Virus record (IMG/VR): IMGVR_UViG_3300050821_002957
Coordinates: 248,001 to 312,000 of that record
Strand: one strand, 5' to 3'
Length of the DNA: 64,000 nt
Below, piece by piece: positions 9,688-63,872 of the stretch. Every line of letters begins with the position of its first letter. Within the stretch, counting starts at the first letter, position 1. The notes under the pieces were generated by a model. It ran no database searches and had not been told where the DNA came from. It saw only the letters and a program-made list of their open reading frames with translations. The translations under genes and the position numbers were made by a program.

Positions 9688-10026
9688 TTATCGTTCATGT
9701 TGTGCCTTGATTTCGCTGAGGGGCGTCGGTTTGAACCACAGATCACGCTCGATCTTGAGGCCCAGCGGGAGACGAACGCTTTCGAGTTCGTGAAGATTGA
9801 AATAGCCGAGTTCGTTATCGAAGCCGACGACATAACCAAAAAACAGCCACGTCTTGATTTCCTTGCCGTTTTCGTCTTCGATGACTTCTTCCTGGCCTTC
9901 GGTGGCGTACCAAGTCCAGCTACCGACCGGCGAGAAAAATTTGACGTGAACGGTGGGATTGGGGTTCTTTTCTTGAGAGTACAATTTCGGGAGCCGATTC
10001 TTGATCTCTGCTGTCATCATCTTCAT
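9688..10026 (-). CDS. DUF2958 family protein
   Basis: VKFFSP...WTWYATE...FFGYV.G..ELGYF.L.EL...IERDLWF. Confidence 0.8.
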   Translation of the reverse strand: MKMMTAEIKNRLPKLYSQEKNPNPTVHVKFFSPVGSWTWYATEGQEEVIEDENGKEIKTWLFFGYVVGFDNELGYFNLHELESVRLPLGLKIERDLWFKPTPLSEIKAQHER

Positions 10027-33662: not shown

Positions 33663-34913
33663 CTAGAGACGCCCGGAACGGATCAGTTCGAGGGCCTGTT
33701 CTTTCGATTTGATGTGACCGGCAAGCTGCCCATTCTCGGCGGCGTCCAGGATTCGTTTGAAATCTGGTCCTGGCTTCATTCCAAGTGCCTTCAGATCATC
33801 CCCATTGACAAATTTTGCCGGATTCAAGTCTTCGGCCTTCATGTTGGCAAACATTTTTGACAACATCTGGAAAGCAGCGATATGGACGTGCTTGTCCTGA
33901 GCCTCTGTACGGCATCCATAGAGCTTCAAGGCGTCGGGGAACAGCTTCTCACGCATCAGGCGTTTCAACACGTCCAGCGTCGTTCCAGCCGTCACAGAAC
34001 CGATTCTGGACTGAAGGTCGATGATGCCGGTAATCTGCTTGATCGTGTCGTTAAAAAACTTCAGACGTTTACCAATTTTTTCTGCGCTCCCTGAAGGCAA
34101 CATGTACAACGCACCAGCCAAACCCAATGCTGGATTGATGTTGGTGCCGATGAACGAAAGTGTTGCCATCATCTGAGCGTAATCATACGGAGTCATGTGG
34201 GCAACTTCCGGCAGAACATGCTCTAAGATGCCGGTGTTGTTCATTCCCTTGATTGTCTTGTGAGCGTCATGACCCATTGCCTTGGTCAATTCCTCTGTTA
34301 TGCGCTCTACGTCCATTTTCGCAATGTTCGGAGCGTGCGCCTGCATTGCCGCCAGTGTCTCTGGGTGGATCTCAAATCCGAGCTTCGCCTGAAAACGATG
34401 TGCCCGAAGCATCCGAAGATGATCCTGTGTAAAACGGTCGTTCGGATTGCCGACACATTTGATGAGGCCGTTTTTTGCATCGGCCTTGCCACCATGAAAA
34501 TCGATGATGTCACCAGTGAACGGGTCCATGTACATTGCATTGACGGTGAAGTCACGCCGGTTGGAATCTTGTTGTTGATCACGAGTGTATTCGACATCAT
34601 CTGGACGCCGACCATCAGTGTACTTTCCATCTTTGCGGAATGTGGCAATGTCGATACCGTGGCAGACAACGACACCAAATGATTTTCCTACGACACTTGT
34701 TCCTGGGAAAAGTTTGAGAACTTCTTCAGGTGTGGCGTCAGTTGCTACGTCAAAATCTTTTGGCTTGTGGCCGGTCAAAAAATCACGAACACAACCGCCA
34801 GCGAGATAGCCGACAAAGCCGTGTCTGCGAAGCGTAGTGATTACGTCTTTGGCGTCGTCAAGCGTGCCATAGGTGGACTCCCGAAGGAGGGCGAATTGTG
34901 TAAATGAGAGCAC
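33663..34913 (-). CDS. cca: CCA tRNA nucleotidyltransferase (class II, no HD domain) with capsid-targeting-like N-terminus
   Basis: GGCVRD..DFDVAT, RKD plus flexible loop Y.DGRRP, RRDFTVNA, QDHLRMLR; N-term MLSFTQFALLRE; TAAATA promoter. Confidence 0.88.
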   Translation of the reverse strand: MLSFTQFALLRESTYGTLDDAKDVITTLRRHGFVGYLAGGCVRDFLTGHKPKDFDVATDATPEEVLKLFPGTSVVGKSFGVVVCHGIDIATFRKDGKYTDGRRPDDVEYTRDQQQDSNRRDFTVNAMYMDPFTGDIIDFHGGKADAKNGLIKCVGNPNDRFTQDHLRMLRAHRFQAKLGFEIHPETLAAMQAHAPNIAKMDVERITEELTKAMGHDAHKTIKGMNNTGILEHVLPEVAHMTPYDYAQMMATLSFIGTNINPALGLAGALYMLPSGSAEKIGKRLKFFNDTIKQITGIIDLQSRIGSVTAGTTLDVLKRLMREKLFPDALKLYGCRTEAQDKHVHIAAFQMLSKMFANMKAEDLNPAKFVNGDDLKALGMKPGPDFKRILDAAENGQLAGHIKSKEQALELIRSGRL

Positions 34914-37294: not shown

Positions 37295-37382
37295 TGGTGG
37301 GACGGGTGTGAGTCGAACACACAGGGTTCCAAGGAACATCCGCTTTACAGGCGGCTCTCGCTCCCTACGAGACTACCATCCC
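37295..37382 (-). tRNA. tRNA-Tyr(GTA), long variable arm, extended D stem
   Basis: GGGATGG/CCGTCCC acceptor, loop CTGTAAA, TTCGACT T-loop, ACCA end. Confidence 0.9.
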
Positions 37383-41876: not shown

Positions 41877-42281
41877 ATGAAAACCTTCCTCGAATTTATC
41901 TTGACCGAGAATGCCATGTTACCGGGCGTTGCTGGCGTAATGAAACACCAACGGGACAATGGTTTAGCCAAGGTAGGTGTTCATCCCAATTTTGCTGCCA
42001 TTAAGAAGCAGCGTGAAGATAGCATCAACAAAGTTGGCACCCATCCAAATTTTGCTGAAATCTTACGTCGGCGTCAAGCAGGTCAAATGTCGGAAGAAGA
42101 AATGAACGAACTGCTTGGTCTATTCAAAAAGAAAAACGATGCAAAACCCTCGCCGTTTGCCAAACCAAAAAACGCAATTGGACATGGTGACAAGGCTTAT
42201 CGCACGAACCACCATTATGGGAACGGTGACATCGAACCATCCACCGTTCCTATTTTCAAACCAACTTGGCAGAATCGTTAG
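41877..42281 (+). CDS. Probable internal head protein
   Basis: N-term MKTFLEFILTE resembles the T4 capsid targeting sequence MKTYQEFIAE; TAAATA promoter; internal repeat KVG.HPNFA.I. Confidence 0.65.
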   Translation: MKTFLEFILTENAMLPGVAGVMKHQRDNGLAKVGVHPNFAAIKKQREDSINKVGTHPNFAEILRRRQAGQMSEEEMNELLGLFKKKNDAKPSPFAKPKNAIGHGDKAYRTNHHYGNGDIEPSTVPIFKPTWQNR

Positions 42282-42865
42282 AAACGTCTCGGACACGCTG
42301 GCGGCTTCGCACAATCACCGGGTCCACCATTGTCCTTGGTCACTTTTTTGTTGGGAACTTTCTTCGGCTTTTTGACCGGCGACAATTGATGTGCATCGAA
42401 GTATTGAACGTCAGTCAAAATGCCTTCATGCAGTTTTGATGATTGCAGACCGACTCGCTGTGACGACGTAAAAAATTTGGACAATGAAATCGCAACACCT
42501 TCAAAATCTGAAATGCTGTCTTTGTACGTGTCGCCGAGTACGATCATATCCGGCTCTTCTTCATATGAAATCACTGCGGCCCCAGGTTGTTCTTGGAGAA
42601 GCTGTTCGTCAATGTAGAATCCGTCCATCGGCCCACCGTCAGCCTTGAGACCCGGAGGCTGAATTGCCACTCGGACGCACGCATACAGGAAAGTTGTGCG
42701 AGAGACAGCGACACCTTTAAGTCCTGAAATGGGATCTTTGTATGTTCTGCCGAGCGTTGCTACTTCTGTCGCTGCGGTCTTCAAAACGTTTTCACGATCA
42801 ATTGGTTTGGAGTTTGCCATGTGTCGAGAGTAACATGATGGCTATAGGTGTGTCAATAATTTTAA

Positions 42866-42953
42866 TGGCTGGAGGAGCAGGACTCGAACCTGCATATGAG
42901 CTTTCGCTACGACACATTAACAGTGTGCTGCCTTACCGTTAGGCGACCCTCCA
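42866..42953 (-). tRNA. tRNA with GTT (Asn) anticodon on a class II long-variable-arm body
   Basis: TGGAGGG/TCCTCCA acceptor, G73-CCA, loop CTGTTAA, 18-nt variable region with AGC-GAAA-GCT hairpin. Confidence 0.88.
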
Positions 42954-42967
42954 ATATAAATGGATGT

Positions 42968-43408
42968 ATGGCAAATTCACAGAAAGTAAAAGAATGGCGC
43001 AAAAGAACCAAACAACGAATGATTGATGCAATGGGTGGATCGTGTGTAGTCTGTGGCTACACTCGTTGTTCAGCCTCATTAGGATTTCATCATCTCGATC
43101 CGAGCAAGAAACATTTTGGTTTCGGAGGTCTTCGTGCCAACCCAAAATCTTGGGAGAAGATCAGCGAAGAACTACGAAAATGCGTTCTGATTTGCAATCG
43201 TTGTCACGGAGAAGTACATGATGGTATAACCATCATTCCCATTAATGCAAAACGGTACGACGAAAGTTATGCTCAGAAATTTGGAAGAAGAAAAATGGCT
43301 CCGGGGACAGGACTCGAACCTGTAACATCCGCTTTAACAGAGCGGCGCTCTACCATTGAGCTACCCCGGAATGAGGTTGCTTCTTTGGTTAGGGTCACGC
43401 CGTTTTAA
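42968..43408 (+). mobile_element. HNH endonuclease between two tRNA-Asn genes
   Basis: CVVCGY..C..SLGFHHLDP..K...E..KCVLICNRCHGEVH. Confidence 0.85.
43296..43370 (-). tRNA. tRNA-Asn(GTT), canonical
   Basis: TCCGGGG/CCCCGGA, CCGCT-CTGTTAA-AGCGG, GCCA end. Confidence 0.95.
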
Positions 43409-43711
43409 AGCGTGACCTACGTATTGTAGGTTGTGTAAGTCATCACAATTCTATTTATACCACGGTGTTTTGAAACTGTCAACCTTTTATTTTACATTGA
43501 CTCCGATCATTCGTCATACCGATCCATGAATTCTCTAACGTCATCAATACGAATTACAAACAAAATGATGAACAGAGGACCGCCGATGCAAAATAACACT
43601 CTGGCAGTTTGCTCCATGTCCATTATCATCTCAAAGAACCCCGCAAGAAAAAGCAAAATGAATGCCAGCCGCCAGCAATTCTTCCAGTTGATCTTCACAT
43701 AATCGAACATG

Positions 43712-44647
43712 TTACACCACCAAATCTTTGGGCAAGCGTTCAGTCCGTGCAATCTCTTCTGCGGTCGGTTTGATCACATTGCCGACGATTCCACCGAAGA
43801 TTGCTCCGACCGTATCTGTGTCGCCACCGACCTCAATGAAGCTGTTGATGCAGGATGCGAACGAAAGACCTTTTTCCAAAGCCTGATGTGCCTGCCATAA
43901 TGCAAAAGGAACTGTATCGACTGCCGTTACTTCTTTGCCGTTTCCAACCTTGCCAATTATTCCCCAATTGGTTTCGTTAAATGCACCCTCACTGGCGACC
44001 CATTCGATGCGATCACGAAGTTCCCCTGATGGTGTGTATTTGATGATGTTTAACCAGAAGTCTTCCTCAGGTCTTCCATAAGTTACGTTTGCTGCGGCTA
44101 TGGCGACCGCTATCGAACCGGCAATAGCATCGACGTGATAATGGGTCACTTCGGCAGATAGACGTGCTTCTTGCGCTACAAGGCCATAGTCAGGTCCAAA
44201 GTGTGCGCCAATGACAGCATCACGCATTGCCGATCCGTTGCCTTTTGAGCCGATGCCCGGTCCCCACCAATTCTTGCTATGCTCAAGCCAATTGTCGGAG
44301 TCATAGCTATAGGTCGTCAACAAACCACGAGTGCCACGCCCATAACCACGCTGAGGATCAACATGAAAATTACGAGCTAATTCCTGAGCGAGTTCGAGTT
44401 GATTGATCGTATTGAATCGGTACAAAGTTCTAACGACACCAATACCGACATGTGTGTCGTCTGTCCAGGGATAGAGAATGTCAATTTTTGTGATCCCTCG
44501 TTCAGTGGCGACATTCCCAGCCTTGTAATATTCAGCCGGAAGAATCTTCATCTGATTTTCGCCTGCTGCATCGCCTACCGACAAGGCAAGAAGCGAAAGA
44601 TAAGTTTCTTTCTTTTTGTACTGCATCGGAGCAAGACAGGGTGTCAT
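43712..44647 (-). CDS. ADP-ribosylglycohydrolase family protein
   Basis: VGDAAG, WTDDT, RGYG, GNGSAMR, VTH, GGDTDT. Confidence 0.92.
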   Translation of the reverse strand: MTPCLAPMQYKKKETYLSLLALSVGDAAGENQMKILPAEYYKAGNVATERGITKIDILYPWTDDTHVGIGVVRTLYRFNTINQLELAQELARNFHVDPQRGYGRGTRGLLTTYSYDSDNWLEHSKNWWGPGIGSKGNGSAMRDAVIGAHFGPDYGLVAQEARLSAEVTHYHVDAIAGSIAVAIAAANVTYGRPEEDFWLNIIKYTPSGELRDRIEWVASEGAFNETNWGIIGKVGNGKEVTAVDTVPFALWQAHQALEKGLSFASCINSFIEVGGDTDTVGAIFGGIVGNVIKPTAEEIARTERLPKDLVV

Positions 44648-45292
44648 ATTTCACCTACTTGGTCGGTTTGTGCCAACCATATGCATGTTGAGCGGTCTTT
44701 GGCTCATATCCTAGAACGAGGTTACAGTTGGCAATACATTCGTCAAGATGACCGTCGCCTTTGTGAGTTGGATCTTGCAAAAATTGAAGTGCATGACGAA
44801 TTGCTTGGCGTGCAGATCGAGCTTCGTTTTGCAGACGTTGAATTTGTTCTTCTATAGTTTCTACCATGTCTTAGTGTTTGTCCTCCACCACCCAAACAGA
44901 TAGCATACCACGGCGTAGATAATTGTCCATTCACCAGCAGTGAGAAAGAATGTGCCGCATCCTATCGTAGGAGTATCGAATGACAAGTTTGCAAAGAAGG
45001 CTTTTCCAAGACAAACAGCGAGACCGCCAAAATAAACAGCGGCAAAGAAGAGTTCACTTGGTCGAGGTACGGTGATATTGGGCCACTTCATATCCACAAT
45101 GTTCGCACCGATCACCAGGGAAGTCAAGTTTTGCGCCTTGATGTAGATGAGCTTCTTGATTTGGATTGTCGGGCGTGCAGATAGTTTCAATGCCGGTAAA
45201 CTTTGTGTTTGGATCGAAACTGAAATTTGGATCTAATTTGTAAATCATAGCAAGAAGTATATAGCACTTCTAAGCCAATGAAATTAAGGTTT

Positions 45293-45366
45293 TGGCAGGA
45301 GTGGTAGGAGTTGAACCCACGCTAAAGGTTTTGGAGGCCCTTGTGCTACCGTTACACCACACTCCT
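45293..45366 (-). tRNA. tRNA-Trp(CCA)
   Basis: AGGAGTG/CACTCCT acceptor, loop CTCCAAA, GCCA end. Confidence 0.92.
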
Positions 45367-45382
45367 GTGATGAGGAAGATTA

Positions 45383-45458
45383 TGGCCGCTGGTTCCAGTT
45401 ACGCTCTGGACTCTTCTGTTCTTCAGACAGACGCTTTCACTAGATTAGCTTACCAGCG
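45383..45458 (-). tRNA. tRNA-Phe(GAA), atypical T-loop AGCGTAA and D-loop AG
   Basis: CGCTGGT/ACCAGCG acceptor, TCTGT-CTGAAGA-ACAGA anticodon arm, TCCAG/CTGGA T stem, GCCA end. Confidence 0.85.
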
Positions 45459-45476
45459 GTGTTGTGCTTTGAGAGA

Positions 45477-45515
45477 GGCGCAACGACTGCTGGTTTCAAC
45501 AGCAGTCGTTGCGCC
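45477..45515 (-). other. Perfect 16-bp hairpin with 7-nt UUGAAAC loop, 5' of tRNA-Phe
   Basis: GGCGCAACGACTGCTG inverted repeat. Confidence 0.8.
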
Positions 45516-45605
45516 CCGGTGGTAAATCGCCAATATGTAAAAGTGCGTGTCATCGTAATTCTATTTATACCACGATCATTGCTGTCTGTCAACAATGAAA
45601 TTCTG

Positions 45606-45684
45606 TGTCGTGAACAAATGGTTCCTCGGATGGGAGCGGTATCATAGGCAGTGATAATCCCACCTGATTCCCCGGCTCACGACA
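45606..45684 (-). ncRNA. Y-RNA-like RNA 1 (bulged-C terminal helix)
   Basis: UGUCGUGAGC-C-GGG...GGGAUUAUC...AUUUGUUCACGACA. Confidence 0.7.
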
Positions 45685-45990
45685 AAATAACAAGGCCACT
45701 CGGAAGTAGCCAAGATCCCTTGGTACACATGGTAACAGGGTCTACTATTCGTGAATGATTTCGCCTATCACTCGTTCTGGCATTAGCTTCTCAGGCGGGA
45801 CACTTCCATTCATAAGGTCAACCATGCGCTGTGCTTGAGCTAGAGTGTGAAAGGTTCCATACGGTGTGACATGTGCTCCACCGTCGCCAGAACCTACTTC
45901 AACCAAATCATACTTCGTTTCCGTCTTCGGCCAAATCTCGTACCTAATTTTCTGTTCGGTCGATGACTTGTTGACGAATTCCATAAATGT

Positions 45991-46521
45991 GTGTCGGTGT
46001 TAAGGCACACCGAGCAGGCCGCAAGATTTTGTTACTGATCAATACCTGCTAAGAACCAGGATGTTTAAGAACTTATCCTTGAGAAAGCTCCGTTGTAGGC
46101 GACACGGCTTCCCTGAGAGTCAGAGTTACTTCAGCTACTCCTGATGGTATGGTGACTCAGCTACCCCGACTTTTTAGTGATCGGCTCCATTCCGGTATTC
46201 GATTCGGCAACGACAGATTCCGACTCTGCAACGTTCTGCTTCTTTTCGATGAGAAGCAAAAATCATAAAAACTCAAAATGACCAGAGGACCCTCAGCAGT
46301 GAGCGCAGATCCCACGTTCGCATACAAGCGTCAATGACAAGTTTTATCCAACGAGCCATTGTCTTGTACGTTGGCTCACCGTCGAGTGCGCTATCCAGTT
46401 CGACACACTCACCTGCGGTTCTAATGACTTTCGTCTCCCGCTGGCCCTATCATCGCCTCACACTTCCGTGTGTTTCAACATCCTGGTCATCTCAAGGGCG
46501 ACAGCCTTGCGGCCACGACAC
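45991..46521 (-). ncRNA. Large pseudoknotted ncRNA, ROOL-like (~530 nt)
   Basis: Long-range pairs 45991-96:46516-21, 46017-25:46506-14, 46055-65:46477-87 and 46077-84:46490-97 (last two cross); lies in a tRNA cluster; family name is an inference. Confidence 0.65.
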
Positions 46522-46768
46522 CCCACCAGCTTTTTTACTGTGTACTGATCACAGGGAGAGCTAGAACGACTTTCGCCGCCCCACACCTACCGCCACTGGT
46601 CGAGACTTCTACATGCGACCAGCCATGTCGCTAAAAGGGGCACTACGAGTAGATGCCCTCCACCACGTTGTTCTTTTACGTCCAACAACGAAACGACTTA
46701 GACCCATAACTCTGACCGGAAATCAGAACTATGATCCACACTCCCCGGTGGAAGCCGGGAAGACTTTG

Positions 46769-46855
46769 AATGTGAACTAATAATTGACAAGGGATTATAG
46801 CCCCGAAGGACCATTTCACCATTTGAAAGATAACCCTCATCTTCCGGCTCACATC
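46769..46855 (-). ncRNA. Y-RNA-like RNA 2
   Basis: GAUGUGAGC-C-GGAAGAUGAGGGUUAUCUUUC...AUUAGUUCACAUU. Confidence 0.68.
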
Positions 46856-46864
46856 ACGAAATAC

Positions 46865-46963
46865 GGCTGCTTGTCCTACCATTAGACGACCGGATCTGCC
46901 GACGCTTTACGCCATGAGAGCAGATTGGACTCCGACCGGGACTCGAACCCGGATTTCTCAGCT
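46865..46963 (-). ncRNA. Circularly permuted tRNA-like module (YrlA-type T-acceptor-D order) 1
   Basis: CCGGG-UUCGAGU-CCCGG, then UCGGAGUCCA, linker hairpin, UCCGG-UC-GUCUAAUGGUAGGAC; closed by GCUG/CAGC. Confidence 0.8.
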
Positions 46964-46971
46964 AGACGAAT

Positions 46972-46996
46972 GACGGAGCATAGTGCGCTCTACGTC
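46972..46996 (-). repeat. Conserved bulged hairpin, copy 1 of 3 (others 58131..58157, 58628..58654)
   Basis: (GA)ACG-UM-GAGCG-CASUR-UGCUC-CGU. Confidence 0.8.
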
Positions 46997-47001
46997 GGAA
47001 T

Positions 47002-47078
47002 TGGTGGATACACATGGGAATTGAACCCATAACCTTCTCGGTGCAAGCGAGTTGCTCTCCCAATTGAGCTAGTGACCC
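47002..47078 (-). tRNA. tRNA-Ala(TGC) with a 1-nt bulge in the acceptor stem
   Basis: GGGTCAC / GTG-T-ATCC, G3.U70, loop CTTGCAC, ACCA. Confidence 0.9.
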
Positions 47079-47085
47079 ATAACTT

Positions 47086-47162
47086 TGTACCTCGAACAAA
47101 TAAGTATCAGAGGGCTTGTCATTAGGAAAGATAACCCTCTAAATCCGGCTCGAAGCACTACA
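47086..47162 (-). ncRNA. Y-RNA-like RNA 3
   Basis: GCUUCGAGC-C-GGAUUUAGAGGGUUAUCUUUC...AUUUGUUCGAGGU. Confidence 0.72.
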
Positions 47163-47169
47163 AAACTTT

Positions 47170-47248
47170 TGGTGGATCGCCAGGGATTTGAACCCTGCTG
47201 TTATCCTCGGTGCAAGCGAGGCAAACACCCCAAGCATTTCCGCAACCC
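47170..47248 (-). tRNA. tRNA-Ala(TGC), non-canonical 6-bp D stem
   Basis: GGGTTGC/GCGATCC with G3.U70; AAATGC-TTGGG-GTGTTT D arm; CCTCG-CTTGCAC-CGAGG. Confidence 0.85.
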
Positions 47249-47256
47249 ACATTTAA

Positions 47257-47466
47257 ATAGCACGAACAAATAGCGGTAGAAGACTGATAGGAGACTGCAT
47301 TTAACGCACCCTCGGATTGGATACCGATCAGATACGCTTCAAACTCCCCTCCTCAAAGTTACGGGCGTCTTTTACTACACGTACAACGAACTGCTTTGTG
47401 CCCACCAAATACTGCCGGTGAACTTTGTCATGGTTAGGTAACCTTCCAACCAGCGGCTCGTGCTAT
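47257..47466 (-). ncRNA. Y-RNA-like RNA 4 (long internal domain)
   Basis: AUAGCACGAGC-C-GC...GAAGGUUACC...AUUUGUUCGUGCUAU. Confidence 0.7.
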
Positions 47467-47468
47467 GT

Positions 47469-47530
47469 CGAAACAGAACGAAACAGAACGAAACAGAACG
47501 AAACAGTGCTCAACGATGCGAAACAGTGCG
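47469..47530. repeat. 10-bp tandem repeat CGAAACAGAA x3 plus two CGAAACAGTG variants
   Basis: Read directly from sequence. Confidence 0.9.
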
Positions 47531-48220
47531 TTAGGTCAAAGATCGTATTCTTTATCTATACACGCTACAGTTTGCTTTCAATAGCGCCTTTGACTCTTTC
47601 AGTCTAACATCCTTAGTATGGGATGTCAAGTGCCACGAACATAATAATTTCATCTTCGTCTTTTTTGCGACGAGCAGCAGCTTCTTTCTCAGTCAACACC
47701 AGAGGAGACGGATTGCCTTCGACTTTGATATTCACTGATAAACCTTGCTGGAGCCATCCAGATACTTCATCGGGCGGCGTCTCGACAAATGCCTGATCAC
47801 ACGCCTTCTGAATTTCGACATTGCGTATTGCAGCAAGCGGTTTGCCGGATGGCGTCATGATGTCTACGTTACAAAGAAGCATGTTTATCTACCAACTGCT
47901 ACGGCTGAAATTCCGATAACACTTTCAATATTGTACAACAGACGAGCGGCTTCTGACAATTCTGAGCCGGTGCGATCCAGTGTAGCATGGACGCCGGTCG
48001 GATCAGAATCAGCTTTTGAGTCATCGTCTTCTCCGGTGTATTGAAGAACATCTAACACCGTTTTTAAGCGACGAGCCAACATCCTAGCCAATTGCAAATT
48101 TGCATCCGAAGAAGATTGAATTGTCGTTGGTTCGTGGTTCTTTTCTGCTGGACCGTCAACAACTAATCCAAACTTCTCTAATAAAACTTTGTTTCCTTTC
48201 TTTCCTGTATTCATAATTTT

Positions 48221-48296
48221 TGGTTGGCCCAGATGGAATCGAACCATCAACCTCAGAATTATCAGTTCTGCGCTCTACCAATTGAGCTATGGGCCA
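48221..48296 (-). tRNA. tRNA-Ile(GAT)
   Basis: TGGCCCA/TGGGCCA, CAGAA-CTGATAA-TTCTG, ACCA. Confidence 0.95.
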
Positions 48297-48381
48297 ACAT
48301 ACTCAGAAGTAGTTATACTAGCGGCGAATCATTAGTGGAGGCCCAATAATCCGCCGCCAGTTTTACAGAATCAACCAAAAA

Positions 48382-50175
48382 CTACTCTTCGGTCTCTTCT
48401 GCGATCCCAGCACTTGAACCACGAATAAAATCCGTAACCAATGCTGGAACATTCGAGTCGAACCCAACGATGTCCAAAGAATACGGGTCCTTCGGATCTG
48501 CGATGGTAAATTGCGTAGAAACCATTCCCATCACGATCAGGCGCACATCATCCTGCCCACGATGCTTACGATACTGCTTGAGAGCCTGCGACGGTTGCAT
48601 TTGTCCAGCCCAAGTCTCATTATCCGTGATCACCATGAAAGCGTCTGCGTCGATGCCAGCCTTTTGAGCGTGAAGCATCGGTGCAGCACAATCGGTTCCA
48701 CCAGCCGACATGCGAGAGGTCTTTGCCAACGCAGTCTTCAGAGTGTCCTTTGCGGTGATGCCAATTTCCTGCATTCCCGTAGAAAATGCATAGATAGCGT
48801 AATTCGGTTCCGTGCGAGCCACAACCATCGCCATTGCTGCGCCTGCTTGTGCTGCCGTGATTCCGGTGCCTTGGATGATGCTGGACGCCCACGACATAGA
48901 ACCAGAAACGTCCATGCCAATGTACGTAGCCTTACCAGTCGGAATTGCGTTTGCGAATGCCAAGTAGAACGTGTTCTCTAAAGCGTCCACAATGGTCGGT
49001 ACAACGGTCCAGGTCGCATCGCTGCGCTGACCGTGGCCTTGGCCGTAGGTGCCTTGTGCCAACAATACCTGGAGCGGGTGAATCTTGCTCTTCTTGACGT
49101 AGGCTTCATCGTTCAAACGAGACACGACGAGCTTCGATGCTGCCGACAGCGGCTTCAAGAGACCAATCTTCGACATGGTTCCAAGATTACGAACCATTGC
49201 AGTTACCGGCATCTTCTGAAGCAGAGCTTCCCAGACTTCCGGTTGCGTCTTAAACTGCGTCGGAATCATTTCGTGAGTCAATCCACCGTCGATGATGCAC
49301 TTTACGATAGTGCTCGTATCCGTCGCCTTCTTTGCGGTTTCATAGGCGGTGATCAACTTCGGTGCGTTCGATCCGGTCAACAAATCATAAGCGTTCTGAT
49401 AGCGAGCACGCTGATTCTGAATTTCCGCAGAAGTCAGATCAGTCGTGCGATGGCTGTTGCCCTGCCACTTCTTGACAGAACGAGTCCAGTTCTGAGCAGC
49501 TTCGTTCAAGGCATCGAGACCACCGAAACGACCCCAAGCCAGCAAAGCACTCTTCATCGGATCAGTCGCCTTGACGTGTGCGAGGCTGACGAGATCACGA
49601 GTGGACCAGCCATCACGCTGTTGATACTTCGCCAACTGATAAGCCAGCGAATCTTCCGTGCGTTCGGTGTACCAGTTGCCGATTGCAGTCTTTACACCAC
49701 GACCGTATCCACGCATGGAATCGAGGTACTCGTTGAAGTGGAACATGTGAGTACCGATACGTGCAACCTTGCTCAATTGCGACAGAGCATAAGCAGCAGT
49801 TTCAGCCGAACCAAAATTCGGTGTTGCGGCAACTGCCAGGGCAAACAATGCCGGATCGTTCTTCGGAGCACGGCCTGCTTGCGAAATGTTGACGATCATA
49901 TCGACCGTGCGCTTTCCATCCAACTGCAAGCACGCACGAACGTTCGCTGCGTTGTCTACAGTCATCTTCTTGGCAGATGCATAGTACGTCGGCGCATCGC
50001 TACCGAGAATCAAAAATCGTTCGAGCATCTGGAAGGGAGTGATGGTGAAGGTGTATCCACCAGCGTTGTTCTGCTTCATCTCTGCTTCCCGGCCCGGAAT
50101 TGCCTGCGACTGTGATGTCTTCTTGCCGCTTAATACCGTTGCGTAATTGCTCTTTGCTGATCCTGCCTTTGCCAT
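48382..50175 (-). CDS. rsr: Ro60/Rsr TROVE-domain RNA-binding protein
   Basis: NNAGGY, RFLILGS, GRAPKNDPALFALA, KYQQRDGWS, RNLG.M, IHP, vWA DVSGSM, TDNETW, GFD; AGGAGA SD before ATG 50175. Confidence 0.95.
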   Translation of the reverse strand: MAKAGSAKSNYATVLSGKKTSQSQAIPGREAEMKQNNAGGYTFTITPFQMLERFLILGSDAPTYYASAKKMTVDNAANVRACLQLDGKRTVDMIVNISQAGRAPKNDPALFALAVAATPNFGSAETAAYALSQLSKVARIGTHMFHFNEYLDSMRGYGRGVKTAIGNWYTERTEDSLAYQLAKYQQRDGWSTRDLVSLAHVKATDPMKSALLAWGRFGGLDALNEAAQNWTRSVKKWQGNSHRTTDLTSAEIQNQRARYQNAYDLLTGSNAPKLITAYETAKKATDTSTIVKCIIDGGLTHEMIPTQFKTQPEVWEALLQKMPVTAMVRNLGTMSKIGLLKPLSAASKLVVSRLNDEAYVKKSKIHPLQVLLAQGTYGQGHGQRSDATWTVVPTIVDALENTFYLAFANAIPTGKATYIGMDVSGSMSWASSIIQGTGITAAQAGAAMAMVVARTEPNYAIYAFSTGMQEIGITAKDTLKTALAKTSRMSAGGTDCAAPMLHAQKAGIDADAFMVITDNETWAGQMQPSQALKQYRKHRGQDDVRLIVMGMVSTQFTIADPKDPYSLDIVGFDSNVPALVTDFIRGSSAGIAEETEE

Positions 50176-50250
50176 ATCATTATCTCCTATGATACCTAAT
50201 TTTTTCGACTTCACCAGAATAACACATGCCTGATTGTTGTCAAGCATGTA

Positions 50251-58358: not shown

Positions 58359-58661
58359 AAATCCACGGTCACTGCTTGCCTATGGAACCCTCATCACATT
58401 CGACATCTCTGCGATTTGAGGTAGCACTTTCCAGGTGCCCTTTATACCCTTACCGACATGCAGCGACCACTAAAAATTCCGGCTGGACTGCGCTGAACGA
58501 GGCCGGTTCGCTATTTCCTGTTCAACTAGATGATGGTAGCTTACCACCATCACGTCGGCTCTTACGCCGCAAGATTGTGCGCTATTACACTTCACATGGT
58601 GTTTAGTCACAATCCAGCCTAATCGACGAACGGAGCATACTGCGCTCTACGTTCAAAATCC

Positions 58662-58730
58662 GTAGTGTCCTGCCATTAGACGACCGGAACGTTACGTTCC
58701 GAGAGGGACTCGAACCCCCATTTCCACTAT
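58662..58730 (-). ncRNA. Circularly permuted tRNA-like module 2 (closed acceptor stem)
   Basis: GGGGG-UUCGAGU-CCCUC; UCGGAACG-UAA-CGUUCCGG; UC-GUCUAAUGGCAGGAC. Confidence 0.8.
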
Positions 58731-58731
58731 C

Positions 58732-58784
58732 GGTGCCGTCCTGCCATTAGACGATTTTCAGAGGAGTCGAACCCCATTTGCACC
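58732..58784 (-). ncRNA. Minimal permuted T-arm/D-arm module 3 (no acceptor stem)
   Basis: GGUGC..GGGG-UUCGACU-CCUC-UGAAAA-UCGUCUAAUGGCAGGAC-GGCACC. Confidence 0.7.
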
Positions 58785-62445: not shown

Positions 62446-62748
62446 TTATTCCTCGTCGTTAATATCTAGCCAATCGGGAGCTTCCCAGGTTCGGTGAATA
62501 ACTCTGACGTAGATTACACCTTCTTCTTCGTCAAGATTCCATTCAAGATCATCGCCAACTTCTATGTTCAATTCACGAACTAATCCATCTGGCAGTGTCA
62601 TCATTCCGTTCGGTTGTATGACACAGGCATATGACCTATTACCAAATCCAGAGTTCACCCAGACACCTAAAATGGGTGGTTCATCATTATCTTCAGTCGG
62701 CTCTTCGTCAAAGTCTTCCGGTTCTAGCTCTGCGTAATCTTCAGCCAT
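62446..62748 (-). CDS. AbrB/MazE-like DNA-binding protein
   Basis: IQPNG.MTLP..LVRELNIEVGDDLEW. Confidence 0.7.
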   Translation of the reverse strand: MAEDYAELEPEDFDEEPTEDNDEPPILGVWVNSGFGNRSYACVIQPNGMMTLPDGLVRELNIEVGDDLEWNLDEEEGVIYVRVIHRTWEAPDWLDINDEE

Positions 62749-63872
62749 TTTCTTCCTACCCGAATCACTGACATTTCTGGCAACGGTTCTTTGAGTCTTG
62801 GATCGATAACTACACTACCATTTACATTTACGGCTCCGCTCTTCACCAGACGACTGCCCTCTGAGACCGAAGATGCCAAACCCATCAGCACCAAGACTCG
62901 ATCCAGGCGTGTATTGACCGAATGAAAAACCGGAATTCTTACAACTGGAATATCGACCGGCGCTTCACGATCTGAAAATCTCTTTGTCCATTCAATTTCA
63001 GCGGTGTCTGCTTTTGGTTCGTCATGTAACCAATGAACAATTCGCCATGCCAAATATTTCTTAGATTGAAATGGTTGAGGATGCCAGCCACATTTATTTG
63101 GAAACAGAACCTCTTGCCATTGGCGCATTACATCATCAGCAATCGACATAACTTTGCTGAACATTTCAAATGGTTCATCCAGCAAACCAATGTGATTACC
63201 GAACGACTTGGACATCTTTCGACCGTCCGTACCAAACAACAAAGGAACCGTCGCAATAACCTGAGGTTTCTCACCACGATCATGCATGTACATCCGGCCC
63301 ATCAGCATGTTGTAAAATTGATCGTTGCCGCCAAGTTCAATATCTACACCTTCTCTGAAAGAGTCATATGCCTGAAGCATGGGGTATAACATCTCATGCA
63401 TAAAGACCGGAGTGTTTGTTACCTTGCGTTCTTTAAAATCGTCACGGCCACCGATTTGACTGAGGGTGAAATGGGACATGAGACGAATTACATCTTGCAT
63501 CTTCATCTCGTCAAACCATTCGGCATTCTTTTTGACGACGGTTTTGGTTCGATCCAAAATTTTGAAAGCCTGTGTCATATAGCTCCAGGCGTTCGTATTG
63601 ATTTCATCGTCAGAAAGCGCAGGCCGAAGCTGATTGCGCCCGGTCGGATCACCAATCGATGCTGTGGTGTTGCCGACGATCATCACAATGGTGTGCCCAG
63701 CATCCTGAAATTCACGCATCTTTTTCAACAGCACAGCATGACCAAGATGTAGGTCTGGTGCTGTGGGATCGAATCCGGCTTTCACACGTAACGGATGACC
63801 TGACGCAATAAGAGCATCAAACTCCTTTTCGTCGAGGAGTTGCGTAAACCCGGATTTGAGTGATTGTTGCAC
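62724..63872 (-). CDS. tyrS: Tyrosyl-tRNA synthetase
   Basis: GFDPTAPDLHLGH, GDPTGR, YP.LQAYD, GG.DQ, KMSKS, C-terminal S4 domain. Confidence 0.97.
   Translation of the reverse strand: MQQSLKSGFTQLLDEKEFDALIASGHPLRVKAGFDPTAPDLHLGHAVLLKKMREFQDAGHTIVMIVGNTTASIGDPTGRNQLRPALSDDEINTNAWSYMTQAFKILDRTKTVVKKNAEWFDEMKMQDVIRLMSHFTLSQIGGRDDFKERKVTNTPVFMHEMLYPMLQAYDSFREGVDIELGGNDQFYNMLMGRMYMHDRGEKPQVIATVPLLFGTDGRKMSKSFGNHIGLLDEPFEMFSKVMSIADDVMRQWQEVLFPNKCGWHPQPFQSKKYLAWRIVHWLHDEPKADTAEIEWTKRFSDREAPVDIPVVRIPVFHSVNTRLDRVLVLMGLASSVSEGSRLVKSGAVNVNGSVVIDPRLKEPLPEMSVIRVGRKWLKITQS

What the first reader, a model, noticed from the sequence alone, without database searches (positions are those of the whole stretch)
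45606..47466. Four paralogous Y-like RNAs share a bulged-C helix and a GGUUAUC-like motif
45606-45684, 46769-46855, 47086-47162 and 47257-47466 all have 5' GAGC-C-G pairing with 3' AUUUGUUC (AUUAGUUC in Y2). They also share an internal G(G/A)UUA(U/C)C motif. The outer stems differ completely yet stay paired, which is covariation. The geometry resembles the GUC-C-GA/UUGAC Ro-binding helix. The inner domains vary widely (total length 77-210 nt) and none is tRNA-like, suggesting interchangeable effector modules on a common Ro handle.
Basis: partly seen in the sequence, partly recalled or inferred. Interest (0 to 1): 0.85.

Follow-up and report, generated by a model that had tools for sequence, protein, structure and literature searches.

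The report
Phage Y RNAs beside a Ro60 gene
Four small structured RNAs encoded just downstream of a Ro60 gene in a roughly 400-kb predicted phage genome belong to the already known family of Ro60-partner "Y RNAs"; they are short, non-tRNA-like versions that closely match the animal Y RNA and nematode stem-bulge RNA design.

Summary
Y1 (45606-45684), Y2 (46768-46856), Y3 (47086-47160) and Y4 (47257-47466) each have a 10-bp terminal stem ending in GAGC/GUUC. That stem is followed by a bulged C, one or two G.U pairs, an upper stem and a UUA(U/C)C loop edge.

The RNAs are interleaved with tRNA genes.

Covariance models built here find the same RNA in 64 of 85 sources searched (83 viral Ro loci, the window and one further locus) and in 68 of 80 bacterial or archaeal Ro loci. 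Every hit is on the Ro strand. The 20 modelled base pairs are 90% paired and covary strongly.

The handle is the one carried by published YrlA RNAs. My YrlA-type model recovers the expected RNA upstream of Ro in Mycobacterium phage ScottMcG.

Phage Ro60 with Y RNAs was reported in 2014 and shown biochemically in 2025, so this is a new member of a known kind. Four details are less expected:
- the locus has four paralogs, each with orthologs in related huge phages;
- the layout is close to that of nematode sbRNAs;
- the UUAUC motif is nearly invariant;
- the window also holds tRNA-like modules that lack a Ro handle.

The parts
48382..50247 (-). Ro60 / Rsr ortholog (621 aa as the longest ORF): TROVE ring plus Ro60-type vWA domain
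   Evidence: Pfam vWA_Ro60 2.2e-57 and TROVE 2.9e-40. PHROG 850 'RNA-binding protein' 1.3e-74. PDB sequence matches: D. radiodurans Rsr 2nvo 4.7e-105, human RO60 9nen 1.1e-96, X. laevis Ro 1yvp 2.9e-92.
48221..48296 (-). tRNA-Ile (GAU), first gene after Ro60
   Evidence: ARAGORN; Rfam tRNA 75.5 bits.
47601..47629 (-). sigma-70-like promoter match (TTGACA-17-TAGACT with TG) upstream of the Y4-tRNA-Y3-tRNA array. This is a weak lead only.
   Evidence: The number of such matches in the region (8) is not above the shuffles (6.1).
47257..47466 (-). Y4: long Y RNA (about 208 nt) with handle UAGCACGAGC-C-GC...UAUUUGUUCGUGCUA, a UUACC motif at 47437-47441 and a loop of about 150 nt with no tRNA features
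   Evidence: Orthologs L082:9486-9718, L084:9251-9469 and L085:10660-10826 have compensatory changes in the terminal stem (UGGCAC/GUGCCA, UGGUAC/GUACCA, CAGCAC/GUGCUG). Not found by R1 or R2. No T-loop motif.
47170..47248 (-). tRNA-Ala (UGC). It starts 8 nt after the 3' end of Y4 and ends 9 nt before Y3.
   Evidence: ARAGORN.
47086..47160 (-). Y3: minimal Y RNA (core 47088-47157, 70 nt). It has a 10-bp lower stem, bulged C 47147, G.U G.U A-U U-A pairs, an upper stem UUAGAGGG/CCCUCUGA and a loop starting UUAUC.
   Evidence: RNAfold -28.7 kcal/mol, z -3.66. Rfam RF01656 nematode sbRNA 34.6 bits, E 8e-5, gathering score 38. R2 76.4 bits, but Y3 was in the seed. Orthologs L082:10048-10116 and L080:9648-9715.
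47006..47078 (-). tRNA-Ala (UGC). It starts 8 nt after the 3' end of Y3.
   Evidence: ARAGORN; Rfam 51.1 bits.
46871..46952 (-). tRNA-like module without a handle, in the permuted order seen in YrlA: T-arm CCGGGUUCGAGUCCCGG, a long acceptor-like hairpin, and D-arm UCGUCUAAUGGUAGGAC. It is closed by GCUG/CAGC and has no recognisable Ro handle.
   Evidence: R3 (YrlA-type model) 24.1 bits, E 0.0011, matching model positions 46-101 only. The D-arm is near-identical to that of the complete YrlA-type RNA L085:11334-11469. Rfam mascRNA-like tRNA-like match, 16.2 bits.
46768..46856 (-). Y2: Y RNA of 89 nt with upper stem GAUGAGGG/CCCUUGUC, a loop starting UUAUC, and an extra GGUCCUUCGGGGCU hairpin in the loop
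   Evidence: R2 40.8 bits, E 4.1e-7, not in the seed. R3 36.8 bits through the handle only. RNAfold z -2.27. Orthologs L082:10557-10643 and L080:9852-9934.
45606..45684 (-). Y1: Y RNA of 79 nt with a longer 5' linker, upper stem AGGUGGGA/UCCCAUCC (7 of its 8 positions pair) and a UUAUC that partly pairs in an apical hairpin
   Evidence: R2 30.9 bits, E 1.5e-4, not in the seed. RNAfold z -2.55. Orthologs L082:11360-11438, L080:10066-10143 and L084:12037-12109.
45293..45458 (-). End of the array: a divergent tRNA with anticodon GAA (45386-45458) and tRNA-Trp (45293-45366)
   Evidence: Rfam tRNA 39.7 and 57 bits. ARAGORN calls only Trp. The orthologs of the GAA tRNA are called tRNA-Phe in L080 and L082.

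Best explanation
Y1-Y4 are noncoding Y RNAs, the RNA partners of the Ro60 protein encoded immediately upstream. Some steps below are shown here and some are inferred.

Shown: each RNA folds so that its 5' and 3' ends form a lower stem with a single bulged C next to a C-G (or U-A) pair and a G.U pair. This layout corresponds to the GGUCCGA/UUGAC helix that animal Ro60 recognises and to the GNCGAA motif of bacterial Y RNAs. Above it come a 2-nt/6-8-nt asymmetric internal loop, an 8-bp upper stem, and a loop that begins with the nearly invariant UUA(U/C)C.

Inferred, by analogy with D. radiodurans Yrn1, S. Typhimurium YrlA/YrlB and Thermus phage phiLo Yrl1/Yrl2: the lower stem docks on the outer face of the Ro60 ring. 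The variable loop domain gates the Ro60 cavity and/or tethers Ro60 to a partner such as host PNPase. The phage would thereby redirect RNA decay or RNA quality control during infection. The four paralogs differ in their loops and each has orthologs in related huge phages, so they probably give Ro60 different partners or specificities.

Inferred from the 8-9 nt spacers to the flanking tRNAs: the RNAs are made from a common tRNA-Y RNA precursor and released by the tRNA-processing enzymes RNase P and the 3' processing nucleases.
For: - Ro60 ortholog with both domains lies 915-2776 nt upstream on the same strand. This matches the published criterion for bacterial and phage Y RNAs: within 4 kb of Ro60 and on the same strand (PMC4201824).
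- R2 gives 105 hits at E<=0.01 in 64 of 85 sources searched (the window, 83 viral Ro loci and one further locus). All are on the Ro strand. Of the 102 hits outside the window, 82 lie upstream of Ro with a median gap of 112 nt.
- R2 gives another 105 hits in 68 of 80 bacterial or archaeal Ro loci, again all on the Ro strand.
- On 85 distinct sequences the 20 pairs are 90.1% paired, against 62.8% in shuffles and 33-52% when the partners are slid. There are 535 double-change cells against 187 in shuffles. No shuffle of 500 reached the observed value for cells paired, double-change cells, further pair types or covariation score. The upper helix is 97% paired with all 8 pairs covarying. An independent Python count gave 7.7 of 8 paired against 5.9 in shuffles.
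- The pair beside the bulge covaries C-G with U-A, and the pair two steps further out covaries G-C with A-U.
- The bulged C is kept in 81 of 85 sequences, the next G in 85 of 85, and UUA(U/C)C in 82-85 of 85.
- The same handle, including GGGUUAUC, carries the permuted tRNA-like domain in 48 distinct RNAs that fit a YrlA-type pattern. R3, built from 20 such RNAs, finds the expected YrlA upstream of Ro in Mycobacterium phage ScottMcG at 80.4 bits and aligns Y2 and Y3 through the handle.
- Chen et al. describe a conserved YUAY at nt 22-25 of YrlA, which is the same place.
- A phage Ro60 binding genome-encoded Y-like RNAs and host PNPase has been shown experimentally (PMC12135203).
- Synteny of tRNA-Ala, Y3, tRNA-Ala, Y2, Y1 and tRNA-Phe/Trp downstream of Ro is kept in related contigs (three of 370-400 kb and one of 26 kb) whose Ro60 is 64-77% identical.
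Against: - There are no expression or binding data. The phage is uncultured.
- Rfam's own YrlA (RF02553), Deinococcus_Y_RNA (RF01053) and Y_RNA (RF00019) models give no match in the window even at E<=10.
- The published motif GNCGAAN0-1G is not literally present. The window has GCCGGG, GCCGGA and GCCGCU.
- Y2 has a G.A mismatch next to the bulge.
- Y4 is not found by the models.
- The nearest Rfam family is nematode sbRNA, whose members are reported not to co-precipitate with the worm Ro protein (PMC4726728). The shape alone therefore does not prove Ro binding.
- Alignment A7 was fitted to the model, which inflates the percentage paired.
Confidence: 0.85

Rival explanations
1. The elements are cis-acting parts of the Ro60 message, such as autoregulatory Ro60 binding sites or decoys in the transcript, rather than stand-alone RNAs.
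For: In other loci most copies lie directly upstream of the Ro start codon on the same strand. The median gap is 112 nt and some are 6-30 nt away, which is where a leader element would sit.
Against: In this window they lie 0.9-2.8 kb downstream of Ro. They are separated from it by a tRNA and two ORFs and are packed 8-9 nt from tRNA genes. In Salmonella and D. radiodurans, and for the phiLo RNAs tested in vitro, such RNAs are discrete species. There are up to four copies per locus. This rival still implies Ro binding.
Confidence: 0.07
2. They act independently of Ro60, for example in initiating phage DNA replication. [quoted passage not shown]
For: The upper stem plus UUAUC is exactly the part required for replication activity in metazoan systems. 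UUAUC is the best conserved unpaired motif here. Worm sbRNAs are not found with Ro.
Against: Genomic linkage to Ro60 is strict across about 130 loci from many phyla. The lower stem with the bulged C, which is the Ro site, is as conserved as the upper part. No bacterial replication role is known for Y RNAs. D. radiodurans and C. elegans CeY RNAs do not support replication.
Confidence: 0.04
3. They are processing or stability hairpins, terminators, or decayed tRNA genes of the tRNA array, or a short palindromic repeat family with no RNA function of its own.
For: They lie inside a tRNA cluster. Y RNAs are thought to derive from tRNAs. The window also holds tRNA-like fragments.
Against: Homologs occur next to Ro60 in loci with no tRNA nearby. 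In the window and in all Ro loci searched (up to 7 kb of flank on each side of Ro) they are found only near Ro and only on its strand. Unpaired motifs are conserved, which simple hairpins do not need. No U-tract follows them. They have no tRNA features.
Confidence: 0.03

Closest known systems
Bacterial and phage Yrl RNAs: S. Typhimurium YrlA/YrlB and YrlA of mycobacteriophages (Chen et al. 2014, PMC4201824; Rfam RF02553)
   Same: They are encoded within 4 kb of Ro60 on the same strand. The 5' and 3' ends pair into the Ro60-binding module. The 5' motif is of the GNCG(A/G) type. A conserved YUAY lies about 22-28 nt from the 5' end. They are often adjacent to tRNA genes. My YrlA-type model aligns Y2 and Y3 through this handle and recovers the ScottMcG RNA.
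   Different: Y1-Y4 lack the T-arm, acceptor-like hairpin and D-arm that define YrlA. The literal GNCGAA is replaced by GCCGG or GCCGC, putting a G.U pair where other family members have A-U. RF02553 gives no hit. They resemble a YrlB-like class with no tRNA-like domain, which has been much less described.
Thermus phage phiLo Yrl1/Yrl2 with phiRo60 (NAR 2025, PMC12135203)
   Same: A phage-encoded Ro60 has several Y-like RNAs encoded beside it. Those RNAs were shown to bind the phage Ro60 and to form ternary complexes with host PNPase. That is the mechanism proposed here.
   Different: The phiLo RNAs lie upstream of Ro and were recognised by a CGAA motif. Here there are four RNAs downstream, interleaved with tRNAs, in a genome of about 400 kb.
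Nematode stem-bulge RNAs (Rfam RF01656) and vertebrate Y RNAs (RF00019)
   Same: Shared features are a lower stem with a single bulged C, a G.U pair after the bulge, an upper stem of 8-9 bp, UUAUC as the first loop nucleotides, and a variable loop. Y3 scores 34.6 bits on RF01656. Two bacterial homologs pass its gathering score of 38, at 44.4 and 38.3 bits.
   Different: There is no Pol III-type oligo-U tail. The A/GUG-CAC/U upper-stem motif is not conserved, because the upper stem covaries freely. There is no hit to RF00019. The RNAs are prokaryotic or viral and linked to Ro60, whereas worm sbRNAs are reported not to bind Ro in vivo.
Deinococcus radiodurans Yrn1 (Rfam RF01053)
   Same: It is a Ro (Rsr)-bound Y RNA that tethers Rsr to PNPase, and the literature describes it as 'more metazoan-like'.
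   Different: Yrn1 is about 120 nt with three stem-loops including a T-arm. RF01053 gives no hit in the window, though some long forms in bacterial loci hit it below threshold.

Membership tests
Bacterial/phage Y RNA (Ro60-binding module as described by Chen et al. 2014) | Encoded within 4 kb of a Ro60 (TROVE) gene and on the same strand | tested here: met
   Ro60 is at 48382-50247(-). Y4 starts 915 nt and Y1 ends 2776 nt downstream on the same strand.
Bacterial/phage Y RNA (Ro60-binding module as described by Chen et al. 2014) | Motif GNCGAAN0-1G near the 5' end | tested here: not met
   The literal motif is absent: Y1 GCCGGGG, Y2 GCCGGAAG, Y3 GCCGGAUU, Y4 GCCGCUGG. GNCG is kept. At the next position the family has G in 41 and A in 36 of 85 sequences, pairing with U either way. 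This is a variant of the motif rather than a different site.
Bacterial/phage Y RNA (Ro60-binding module as described by Chen et al. 2014) | Long stem formed by the 5' and 3' ends, and a conserved YUAY about 22-25 nt from the 5' end | tested here: met
   A 10-bp terminal stem is present in all four. UUAU is at nt 24-27 in Y2 and Y3 and at 28-31 in Y1. Y4 has UUAC at 25-28.
Bacterial/phage Y RNA (Ro60-binding module as described by Chen et al. 2014) | Bound by Ro60/Rsr | not testable with these tools
   Needs EMSA or co-purification with the protein encoded at 48382-50247.
YrlA subfamily (Rfam RF02553) | Effector module that mimics tRNA (T-arm, acceptor-like hairpin, D-arm) | tested here: not met
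   There is no tRNA or T-loop signal inside Y1-Y4. R3 aligns Y2 and Y3 only through the handle and skips model positions of the tRNA-like core.
YrlA subfamily (Rfam RF02553) | Score at or above Rfam gathering threshold (69 bits) | tested here: not met
   No RF02553 match at E<=10 in 42000-49000 or 45560-47520.
Nematode sbRNA (Rfam RF01656) / metazoan Y RNA | Lower stem with a single bulged C, upper stem of 8-9 bp, and UUAUC at the 5' edge of the loop | tested here: met
   Y4 has UUACC.
Nematode sbRNA (Rfam RF01656) / metazoan Y RNA | Score at or above Rfam gathering threshold (38 bits for RF01656), or any hit to RF00019 | tested here: not met
   Y3 scores 34.6 bits. Y1, Y2 and Y4 give no hit, and RF00019 gives no hit. 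Bacterial homologs L122:4162-4231 (44.4 bits) and L099:4865-4933 (38.3 bits) do pass.
Nematode sbRNA (Rfam RF01656) / metazoan Y RNA | Pol III transcript ending in an oligo-U tail (La site) | tested here: not met
   The 3' flanks are ACAGAAUU (Y1), AAAGUCUU (Y2), AAAGUUAU (Y3) and UUAAAUGU (Y4). None has a U-run.
Deinococcus Y RNA (Rfam RF01053) | Match to the family model | tested here: not met
   No hit at E<=10.

The most novel reading that the evidence does not exclude
The short Y RNAs of phages and bacteria that lack a tRNA-like domain, including Y1-Y3 here, may be true homologs of metazoan Y RNAs and nematode sbRNAs. On this reading, the whole handle is an ancient unit of the Ro60 RNP that predates the split between cells and these viruses: the bulged-C lower stem, the 2-nt linker, the 8-bp upper stem and UUAUC.

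That would make UUAUC a Ro60-RNP contact rather than a motif specific to replication. A related reading is that this phage has split the handle (Y1-Y4) and the tRNA-like effector module (46871-46952, 58663-58776) into separate RNAs.
Probability: 0.3. Interest if true: 0.65.

Novelty: new member of a known kind. Interest (0 to 1): 0.4.

Why it matters
Ro60 and Y RNAs matter in RNA quality control and in human autoimmunity, and how a Y RNA's loop domain selects a partner is still largely open.

This locus and its relatives offer a natural series: four to six paralogs with one conserved handle and different loops, next to a single Ro60, in huge phages. That series could be used to map which loop recruits which partner.

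The family-wide data also bear on two published points. The bulged helix and the UUAUC motif are under strong selection in prokaryotic and viral Y RNAs. [quoted passage not shown] It also bears on whether UUAUC, known from metazoan replication assays, belongs to the Ro60 RNP.

The basic finding, Y RNAs next to a phage Ro60, is already established.

Tried and rejected
- The Rfam gathering scan of the whole window found only tRNAs.
- Blastn of the region against 50,697 cultured phage records matched only through the tRNAs, so no close cultured relative exists in that collection.
- RNAalifold on the model-derived alignment A4 and on the MAFFT alignment A5 recovered only the lower stem, because the 3' strand of the upper stem was shifted. 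I solved this with an anchor-based count and a hand-registered seed alignment.
- R1 and R2, the latter with filters off, do not detect Y4. A loose descriptor scan gave many chance hits. It was useful only in combination with the UUA(U/C)C motif.
- I looked for a Ro handle around the tRNA-like module at 46871-46952 and around those at 58.7 kb and found none.
- R2 found nothing at E<=0.01 in Sinorhizobium phage Phosso or ScottMcG. R3 found the ScottMcG RNAs but nothing in Phosso.
- No RtcB or RNA ligase was found among the ORFs scanned. The neighbours are ClpP, a Macro domain protein, an ADP-ribosylglycohydrolase, a CCA-adding enzyme and TyrRS.
- Two reviews (PMC10870794, PMC6047535) and the supplements of Chen et al. 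2014 are not held. I could therefore not check whether a short UUAUC-bearing class has been described there.
- I rejected protein coding, because only short overlapping ORFs occur here. I also rejected terminators, because no U-tracts follow the stems.
Full report
**What is in the sequence**

The four elements are real and read 5'->3' on the minus strand. Their coordinates are Y1 45606-45684, Y2 46768-46856, Y3 47086-47160 and Y4 47257-47466.

Each begins with six variable nucleotides followed by GAGC, then C, then G. Each ends with AUU(U/A)GUUC followed by the complement of the six variable nucleotides. The ends therefore form a 10-bp stem (N6 plus G-C, A-U, G.U, C-G), a bulged C, and then G.U. 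A further G.U follows in Y1 and Y3.

The pattern GAGCCG-N(40-70)-ATTWGTTC occurs three times in the window against 0.05 expected, and 0 of 100 shuffles reach three. The long-gap version finds Y4 once against 0.03 expected.

All four have G(G/A)UUA(U/C)C at 10-14 nt after the CCG. RNAfold gives z-scores of -2.6, -2.3 and -3.7 for Y1-Y3. For Y4 the MFE is weakly supported (z -1.65), but the centroid keeps the terminal stem.

**Context**

The ORF at 48382-50247, on the same strand and directly upstream, is a full-length Ro60 ortholog.
- Pfam gives vWA_Ro60 at 2.2e-57 and TROVE at 2.9e-40.
- It matches D. radiodurans Rsr, human RO60 and Xenopus Ro in the PDB at E-values from 1e-105 to 1e-92.

Downstream, on the minus strand, the order is as follows:
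1. tRNA-Ile
2. two small ORFs
3. Y4
4. tRNA-Ala
5. Y3
6. tRNA-Ala
7. a tRNA-like module without a handle
8. Y2
9. about 640 nt without an ORF
10. a 79-codon ORF
11. Y1
12. a divergent tRNA with anticodon GAA
13. tRNA-Trp

The spacers between Y4, Y3 and their flanking tRNA-Ala genes are 8-9 nt.

The window is part of IMG/VR contig UViG_3300050821_002957, which is 405,631 bp. It also encodes TyrRS, a CCA-adding enzyme, ClpP, a Clp-type AAA ATPase, a Macro-domain protein and an ADP-ribosylglycohydrolase. No cultured phage is close at the DNA level.

**Homologs and covariation**

Model R1 was built from Y1-Y3 using the lower stem only. In 78 other Ro-encoding viral loci it found dozens of matches, 78 of 82 on the Ro strand. 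The lower stem showed 106 double-change cells against 37 in shuffles.

An anchor-based count then showed an 8-bp upper stem immediately 5' of UUAUC in 45 distinct sequences. It was 7.7 of 8 paired against 5.9 for shuffled partners, with all common pair types present at most positions.

Model R2 was built from 16 sequences in a common register with 20 pairs. Y3 was in the seed but Y1 and Y2 were not.
- It gave 105 hits at E<=0.01 in 64 of 85 sources (the window, 83 viral Ro loci and one further locus), every one on the Ro strand.
- Of the 102 hits outside the window, 82 lie upstream of Ro (median gap 112 nt) and 20 downstream.
- On the 85 distinct sequences, 90.1% of cells are paired, against 62.8% in shuffles and 33-52% with slid partners.
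- 18 of 20 pairs show changes on both sides.
- There are 535 double-change cells against 187, and no shuffle of 500 reached the observed value for cells paired, double-change cells, further pair types or covariation score.
- The upper helix is 97% paired.

The pair next to the bulge alternates C-G and U-A. The pair two steps further out alternates G-C and A-U.

This alignment was fitted to the model, which favours pairing. The slid controls and the independent count point the same way.

The bulged C is kept in 81 of 85 sequences, the following G in 85 of 85, and U-U-A-(U/C)-C in 84, 85, 83, 84 and 82 of 85.

The same model gave 105 hits in 68 of 80 Ro loci from bacterial and one archaeal MAG. 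These include Verrucomicrobiota, Armatimonadota, Chloroflexota, Myxococcota, Acidobacteria and CPR, and again every hit is on the Ro strand.

**Relation to known Y RNAs**

Chen et al. 2014 reported YrlA-like RNAs within 4 kb of Ro60 on the same strand in 254 bacteria and 22 phages. They described a 5' GNCGAAN0-1G motif and a conserved YUAY at nt 22-25.

In the loci fetched here, 48 distinct RNAs fit a pattern that requires the handle (with a UUA(U/C)C-type motif), then a T-arm, then a D-arm. In the examples examined an acceptor-like hairpin lies between the two arms. That is the YrlA design.

Model R3, built from 20 of these, behaves as follows.
- It finds the expected RNA just upstream of Ro in Mycobacterium phage ScottMcG at 80.4 bits.
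- It finds a complete YrlA-type RNA in the related phage contig L085 at 85.3 bits.
- It aligns the window's Y2 (36.8 bits) and Y3 (28.6 bits) through the handle only.
- About 25 of the viral loci hold a full YrlA-type RNA beside the short ones.

So Y1-Y4 carry the family's Ro60-binding module but not the tRNA-like module. Literally, GNCGAA is not met, because the window has GCCGG or GCCGC. Across the family this position is G in 41 and A in 36 of 85 sequences, pairing with U in both cases.

Rfam's YrlA, Deinococcus_Y_RNA and Y_RNA models give no hit in the window. The only Rfam match is Y3 to RF01656, a nematode stem-bulge RNA family, at 34.6 bits (gathering score 38, E 8e-5). That alignment pairs UCGAGCCGG..GGGUUAUC..CCC..UUUGUUCG with UCGGUCCGG..GGGUUAUC..CCC..CUUGACCG. 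Two bacterial short forms exceed that family's curated threshold, at 44.4 and 38.3 bits.

The published description of sbRNAs and vertebrate Y RNAs fits the layout measured here. It lists:
- a lower stem with one bulged C;
- a 9-bp upper stem;
- UUAUC at the 5' edge of the loop;
- a variable loop.

No paper in the held library contains both YrlA/YrlB and UUAUC, but key reviews are not held.

**The four paralogs are conserved as individuals**

Ro60 proteins 64-77% identical to the window's occur on related contigs, three of 370-400 kb and one of 26 kb. Four such loci keep the order tRNA-Ala, Y3, tRNA-Ala, Y2, Y1, tRNA-Phe/Trp downstream of Ro.

Y4, which the models miss, has orthologs at L082:9486-9718, L084:9251-9469 and L085:10660-10826.
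- Their terminal stems show compensatory changes: UAGCAC/GUGCUA, UGGCAC/GUGCCA, UGGUAC/GUACCA and CAGCAC/GUGCUG.
- They keep GGUUA(C/U)C.
- One compensatory change occurs in the upper stem: GAAG/CUUC against AAAG/CUUU.

Relatives carry further paralogs. One is a YrlA-type RNA (L085:11334-11469). Another has a non-permuted tRNA-like fold in its loop (L082:9729-9902, with an Rfam tRNA match of 38.7 bits at 9804-9875). Across bacteria the loop may be a hairpin, a permuted tRNA-like domain, a D-anticodon-T domain or something else.

**Mechanism**

Shown here:
- the conserved fold;
- its covariation;
- its strict linkage to Ro60 in position and strand;
- its shared handle with YrlA.

Inferred from established work on X. 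laevis Ro-Y RNA, D. radiodurans Rsr-Yrn1-PNPase, S. Typhimurium Rsr-YrlA/B, and Thermus phage phiLo phiRo60-Yrl1/2-PNPase (PMC12135203):
- The lower stem binds the outer face of the Ro60 ring.
- The loop module gates the cavity and/or tethers a partner such as host PNPase.
- The phage thereby retargets RNA decay or surveillance.

Inferred from the 8-9 nt spacers: the RNAs are co-transcribed with the tRNAs and released by tRNA processing. A promoter-like match at 47629-47601 and tandem 10-nt repeats at 47467-47530 precede Y4. The promoter scan is not above background.

**Verdict**

It is a new member of a known kind. Interest is moderate, for four reasons:
- the multi-paralog array in huge phages;
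- the very wide, strongly covarying short class that meets a metazoan family's threshold;
- the near-invariant UUAUC;
- the tRNA-like modules without a handle.

Noticed in passing
window 46871-46952 (-), 58663-58719 (-), 58737-58776 (-): Three tRNA-like modules are in the circularly permuted order seen in YrlA: T-arm, acceptor-like hairpin or short linker, and D-arm UCGUCUAAUGGYAGGAC. Each is closed by a 4-5 bp stem and has no Ro handle. R3 scores are 24.1, 33.7 and 11.8 bits over the model's tRNA-like core only. They could be decayed YrlA genes or free-standing effector modules.
   Followed up: partly
window 46974-46996 (-) and 58629-58651 (-); L082:10207-10229: A conserved hairpin ACGUAGAGCGCA(C/G)UAUGCUCCGU recurs next to the handle-less tRNA-like modules and right after tRNA-Ala. 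It is also present in the related contig L082.
   Followed up: no
window 45990-46630 (-): About 640 nt lie between Y2 and a 79-codon ORF with no ORF over 76 codons. The stretch is rich in GNRA-type loops. RNAfold z is -2.8 for 45985-46770. It is conserved in patches at about 80% with L082:10731-11267 but absent from L080, and has no Rfam match, including GOLLD and ROOL. It is a candidate large structured RNA.
   Followed up: partly
window 46654-46697 (-): A 44-nt stretch just 3' of Y2 is 100% identical to L080:10000-10043, although the flanks diverge. It contains a CGUUGUU/AACAACG hairpin and runs into a GC-rich hairpin followed by CUUUU, which looks like a terminator.
   Followed up: no
window 45386-45458 (-): A divergent tRNA has anticodon GAA, a 7-bp acceptor stem and an atypical T-loop (AGCGUAA). 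Rfam scores it 39.7 bits and ARAGORN misses it. Its orthologs in L080 and L082 are called tRNA-Phe.
   Followed up: partly
window 47467-47530 (-): Three to four tandem copies of a 10-nt unit (GUUCUGUUUC), plus two degenerate GCACUGUUUCG units, lie immediately 5' of Y4. They are downstream of a TTGACA-17-TAGACT promoter-like site at 47629-47601. This may be a regulator binding array.
   Followed up: no
window 45476-45516: A perfect 17-bp palindromic hairpin (GCGCAACGACUGCUGUU...AGCAGUCGUUGCGC) lies between Y1 and the GAA tRNA and has no U-tract. The region is conserved with L080 and L082.
   Followed up: no
L122:4162-4231 and L099:4865-4933 (Verrucomicrobiota MAGs): Short Y RNAs directly upstream of bacterial Ro60 genes exceed the curated gathering score of Rfam RF01656, a nematode sRNA family, at 44.4 and 38.3 bits against 38. 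In an automated annotation they would be labelled as nematode RNAs.
   Followed up: partly
L082:9729-9902; L091:1480-1603; L121:4590-4706; L114:2932-3037: A second kind of tRNA-like Y RNA has the loop of the Ro handle holding a D-arm, anticodon-like arm and T-arm in the normal tRNA order, not the permuted YrlA order. The Rfam tRNA model scores 38.7 bits inside L082:9729-9902.
   Followed up: partly
window 42866-42953 (-) and 37295-37382 (-): Two tRNAs have long variable regions. One is an 88-nt tRNA-Asn(GUU) with a 15-nt insert in the variable region, lying next to a normal tRNA-Asn (43296-43370). The other is an 88-nt tRNA-Tyr found only by ARAGORN. The window also encodes a TyrRS (62724-63872) and a CCA-adding enzyme (33663-34913).
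   Followed up: no
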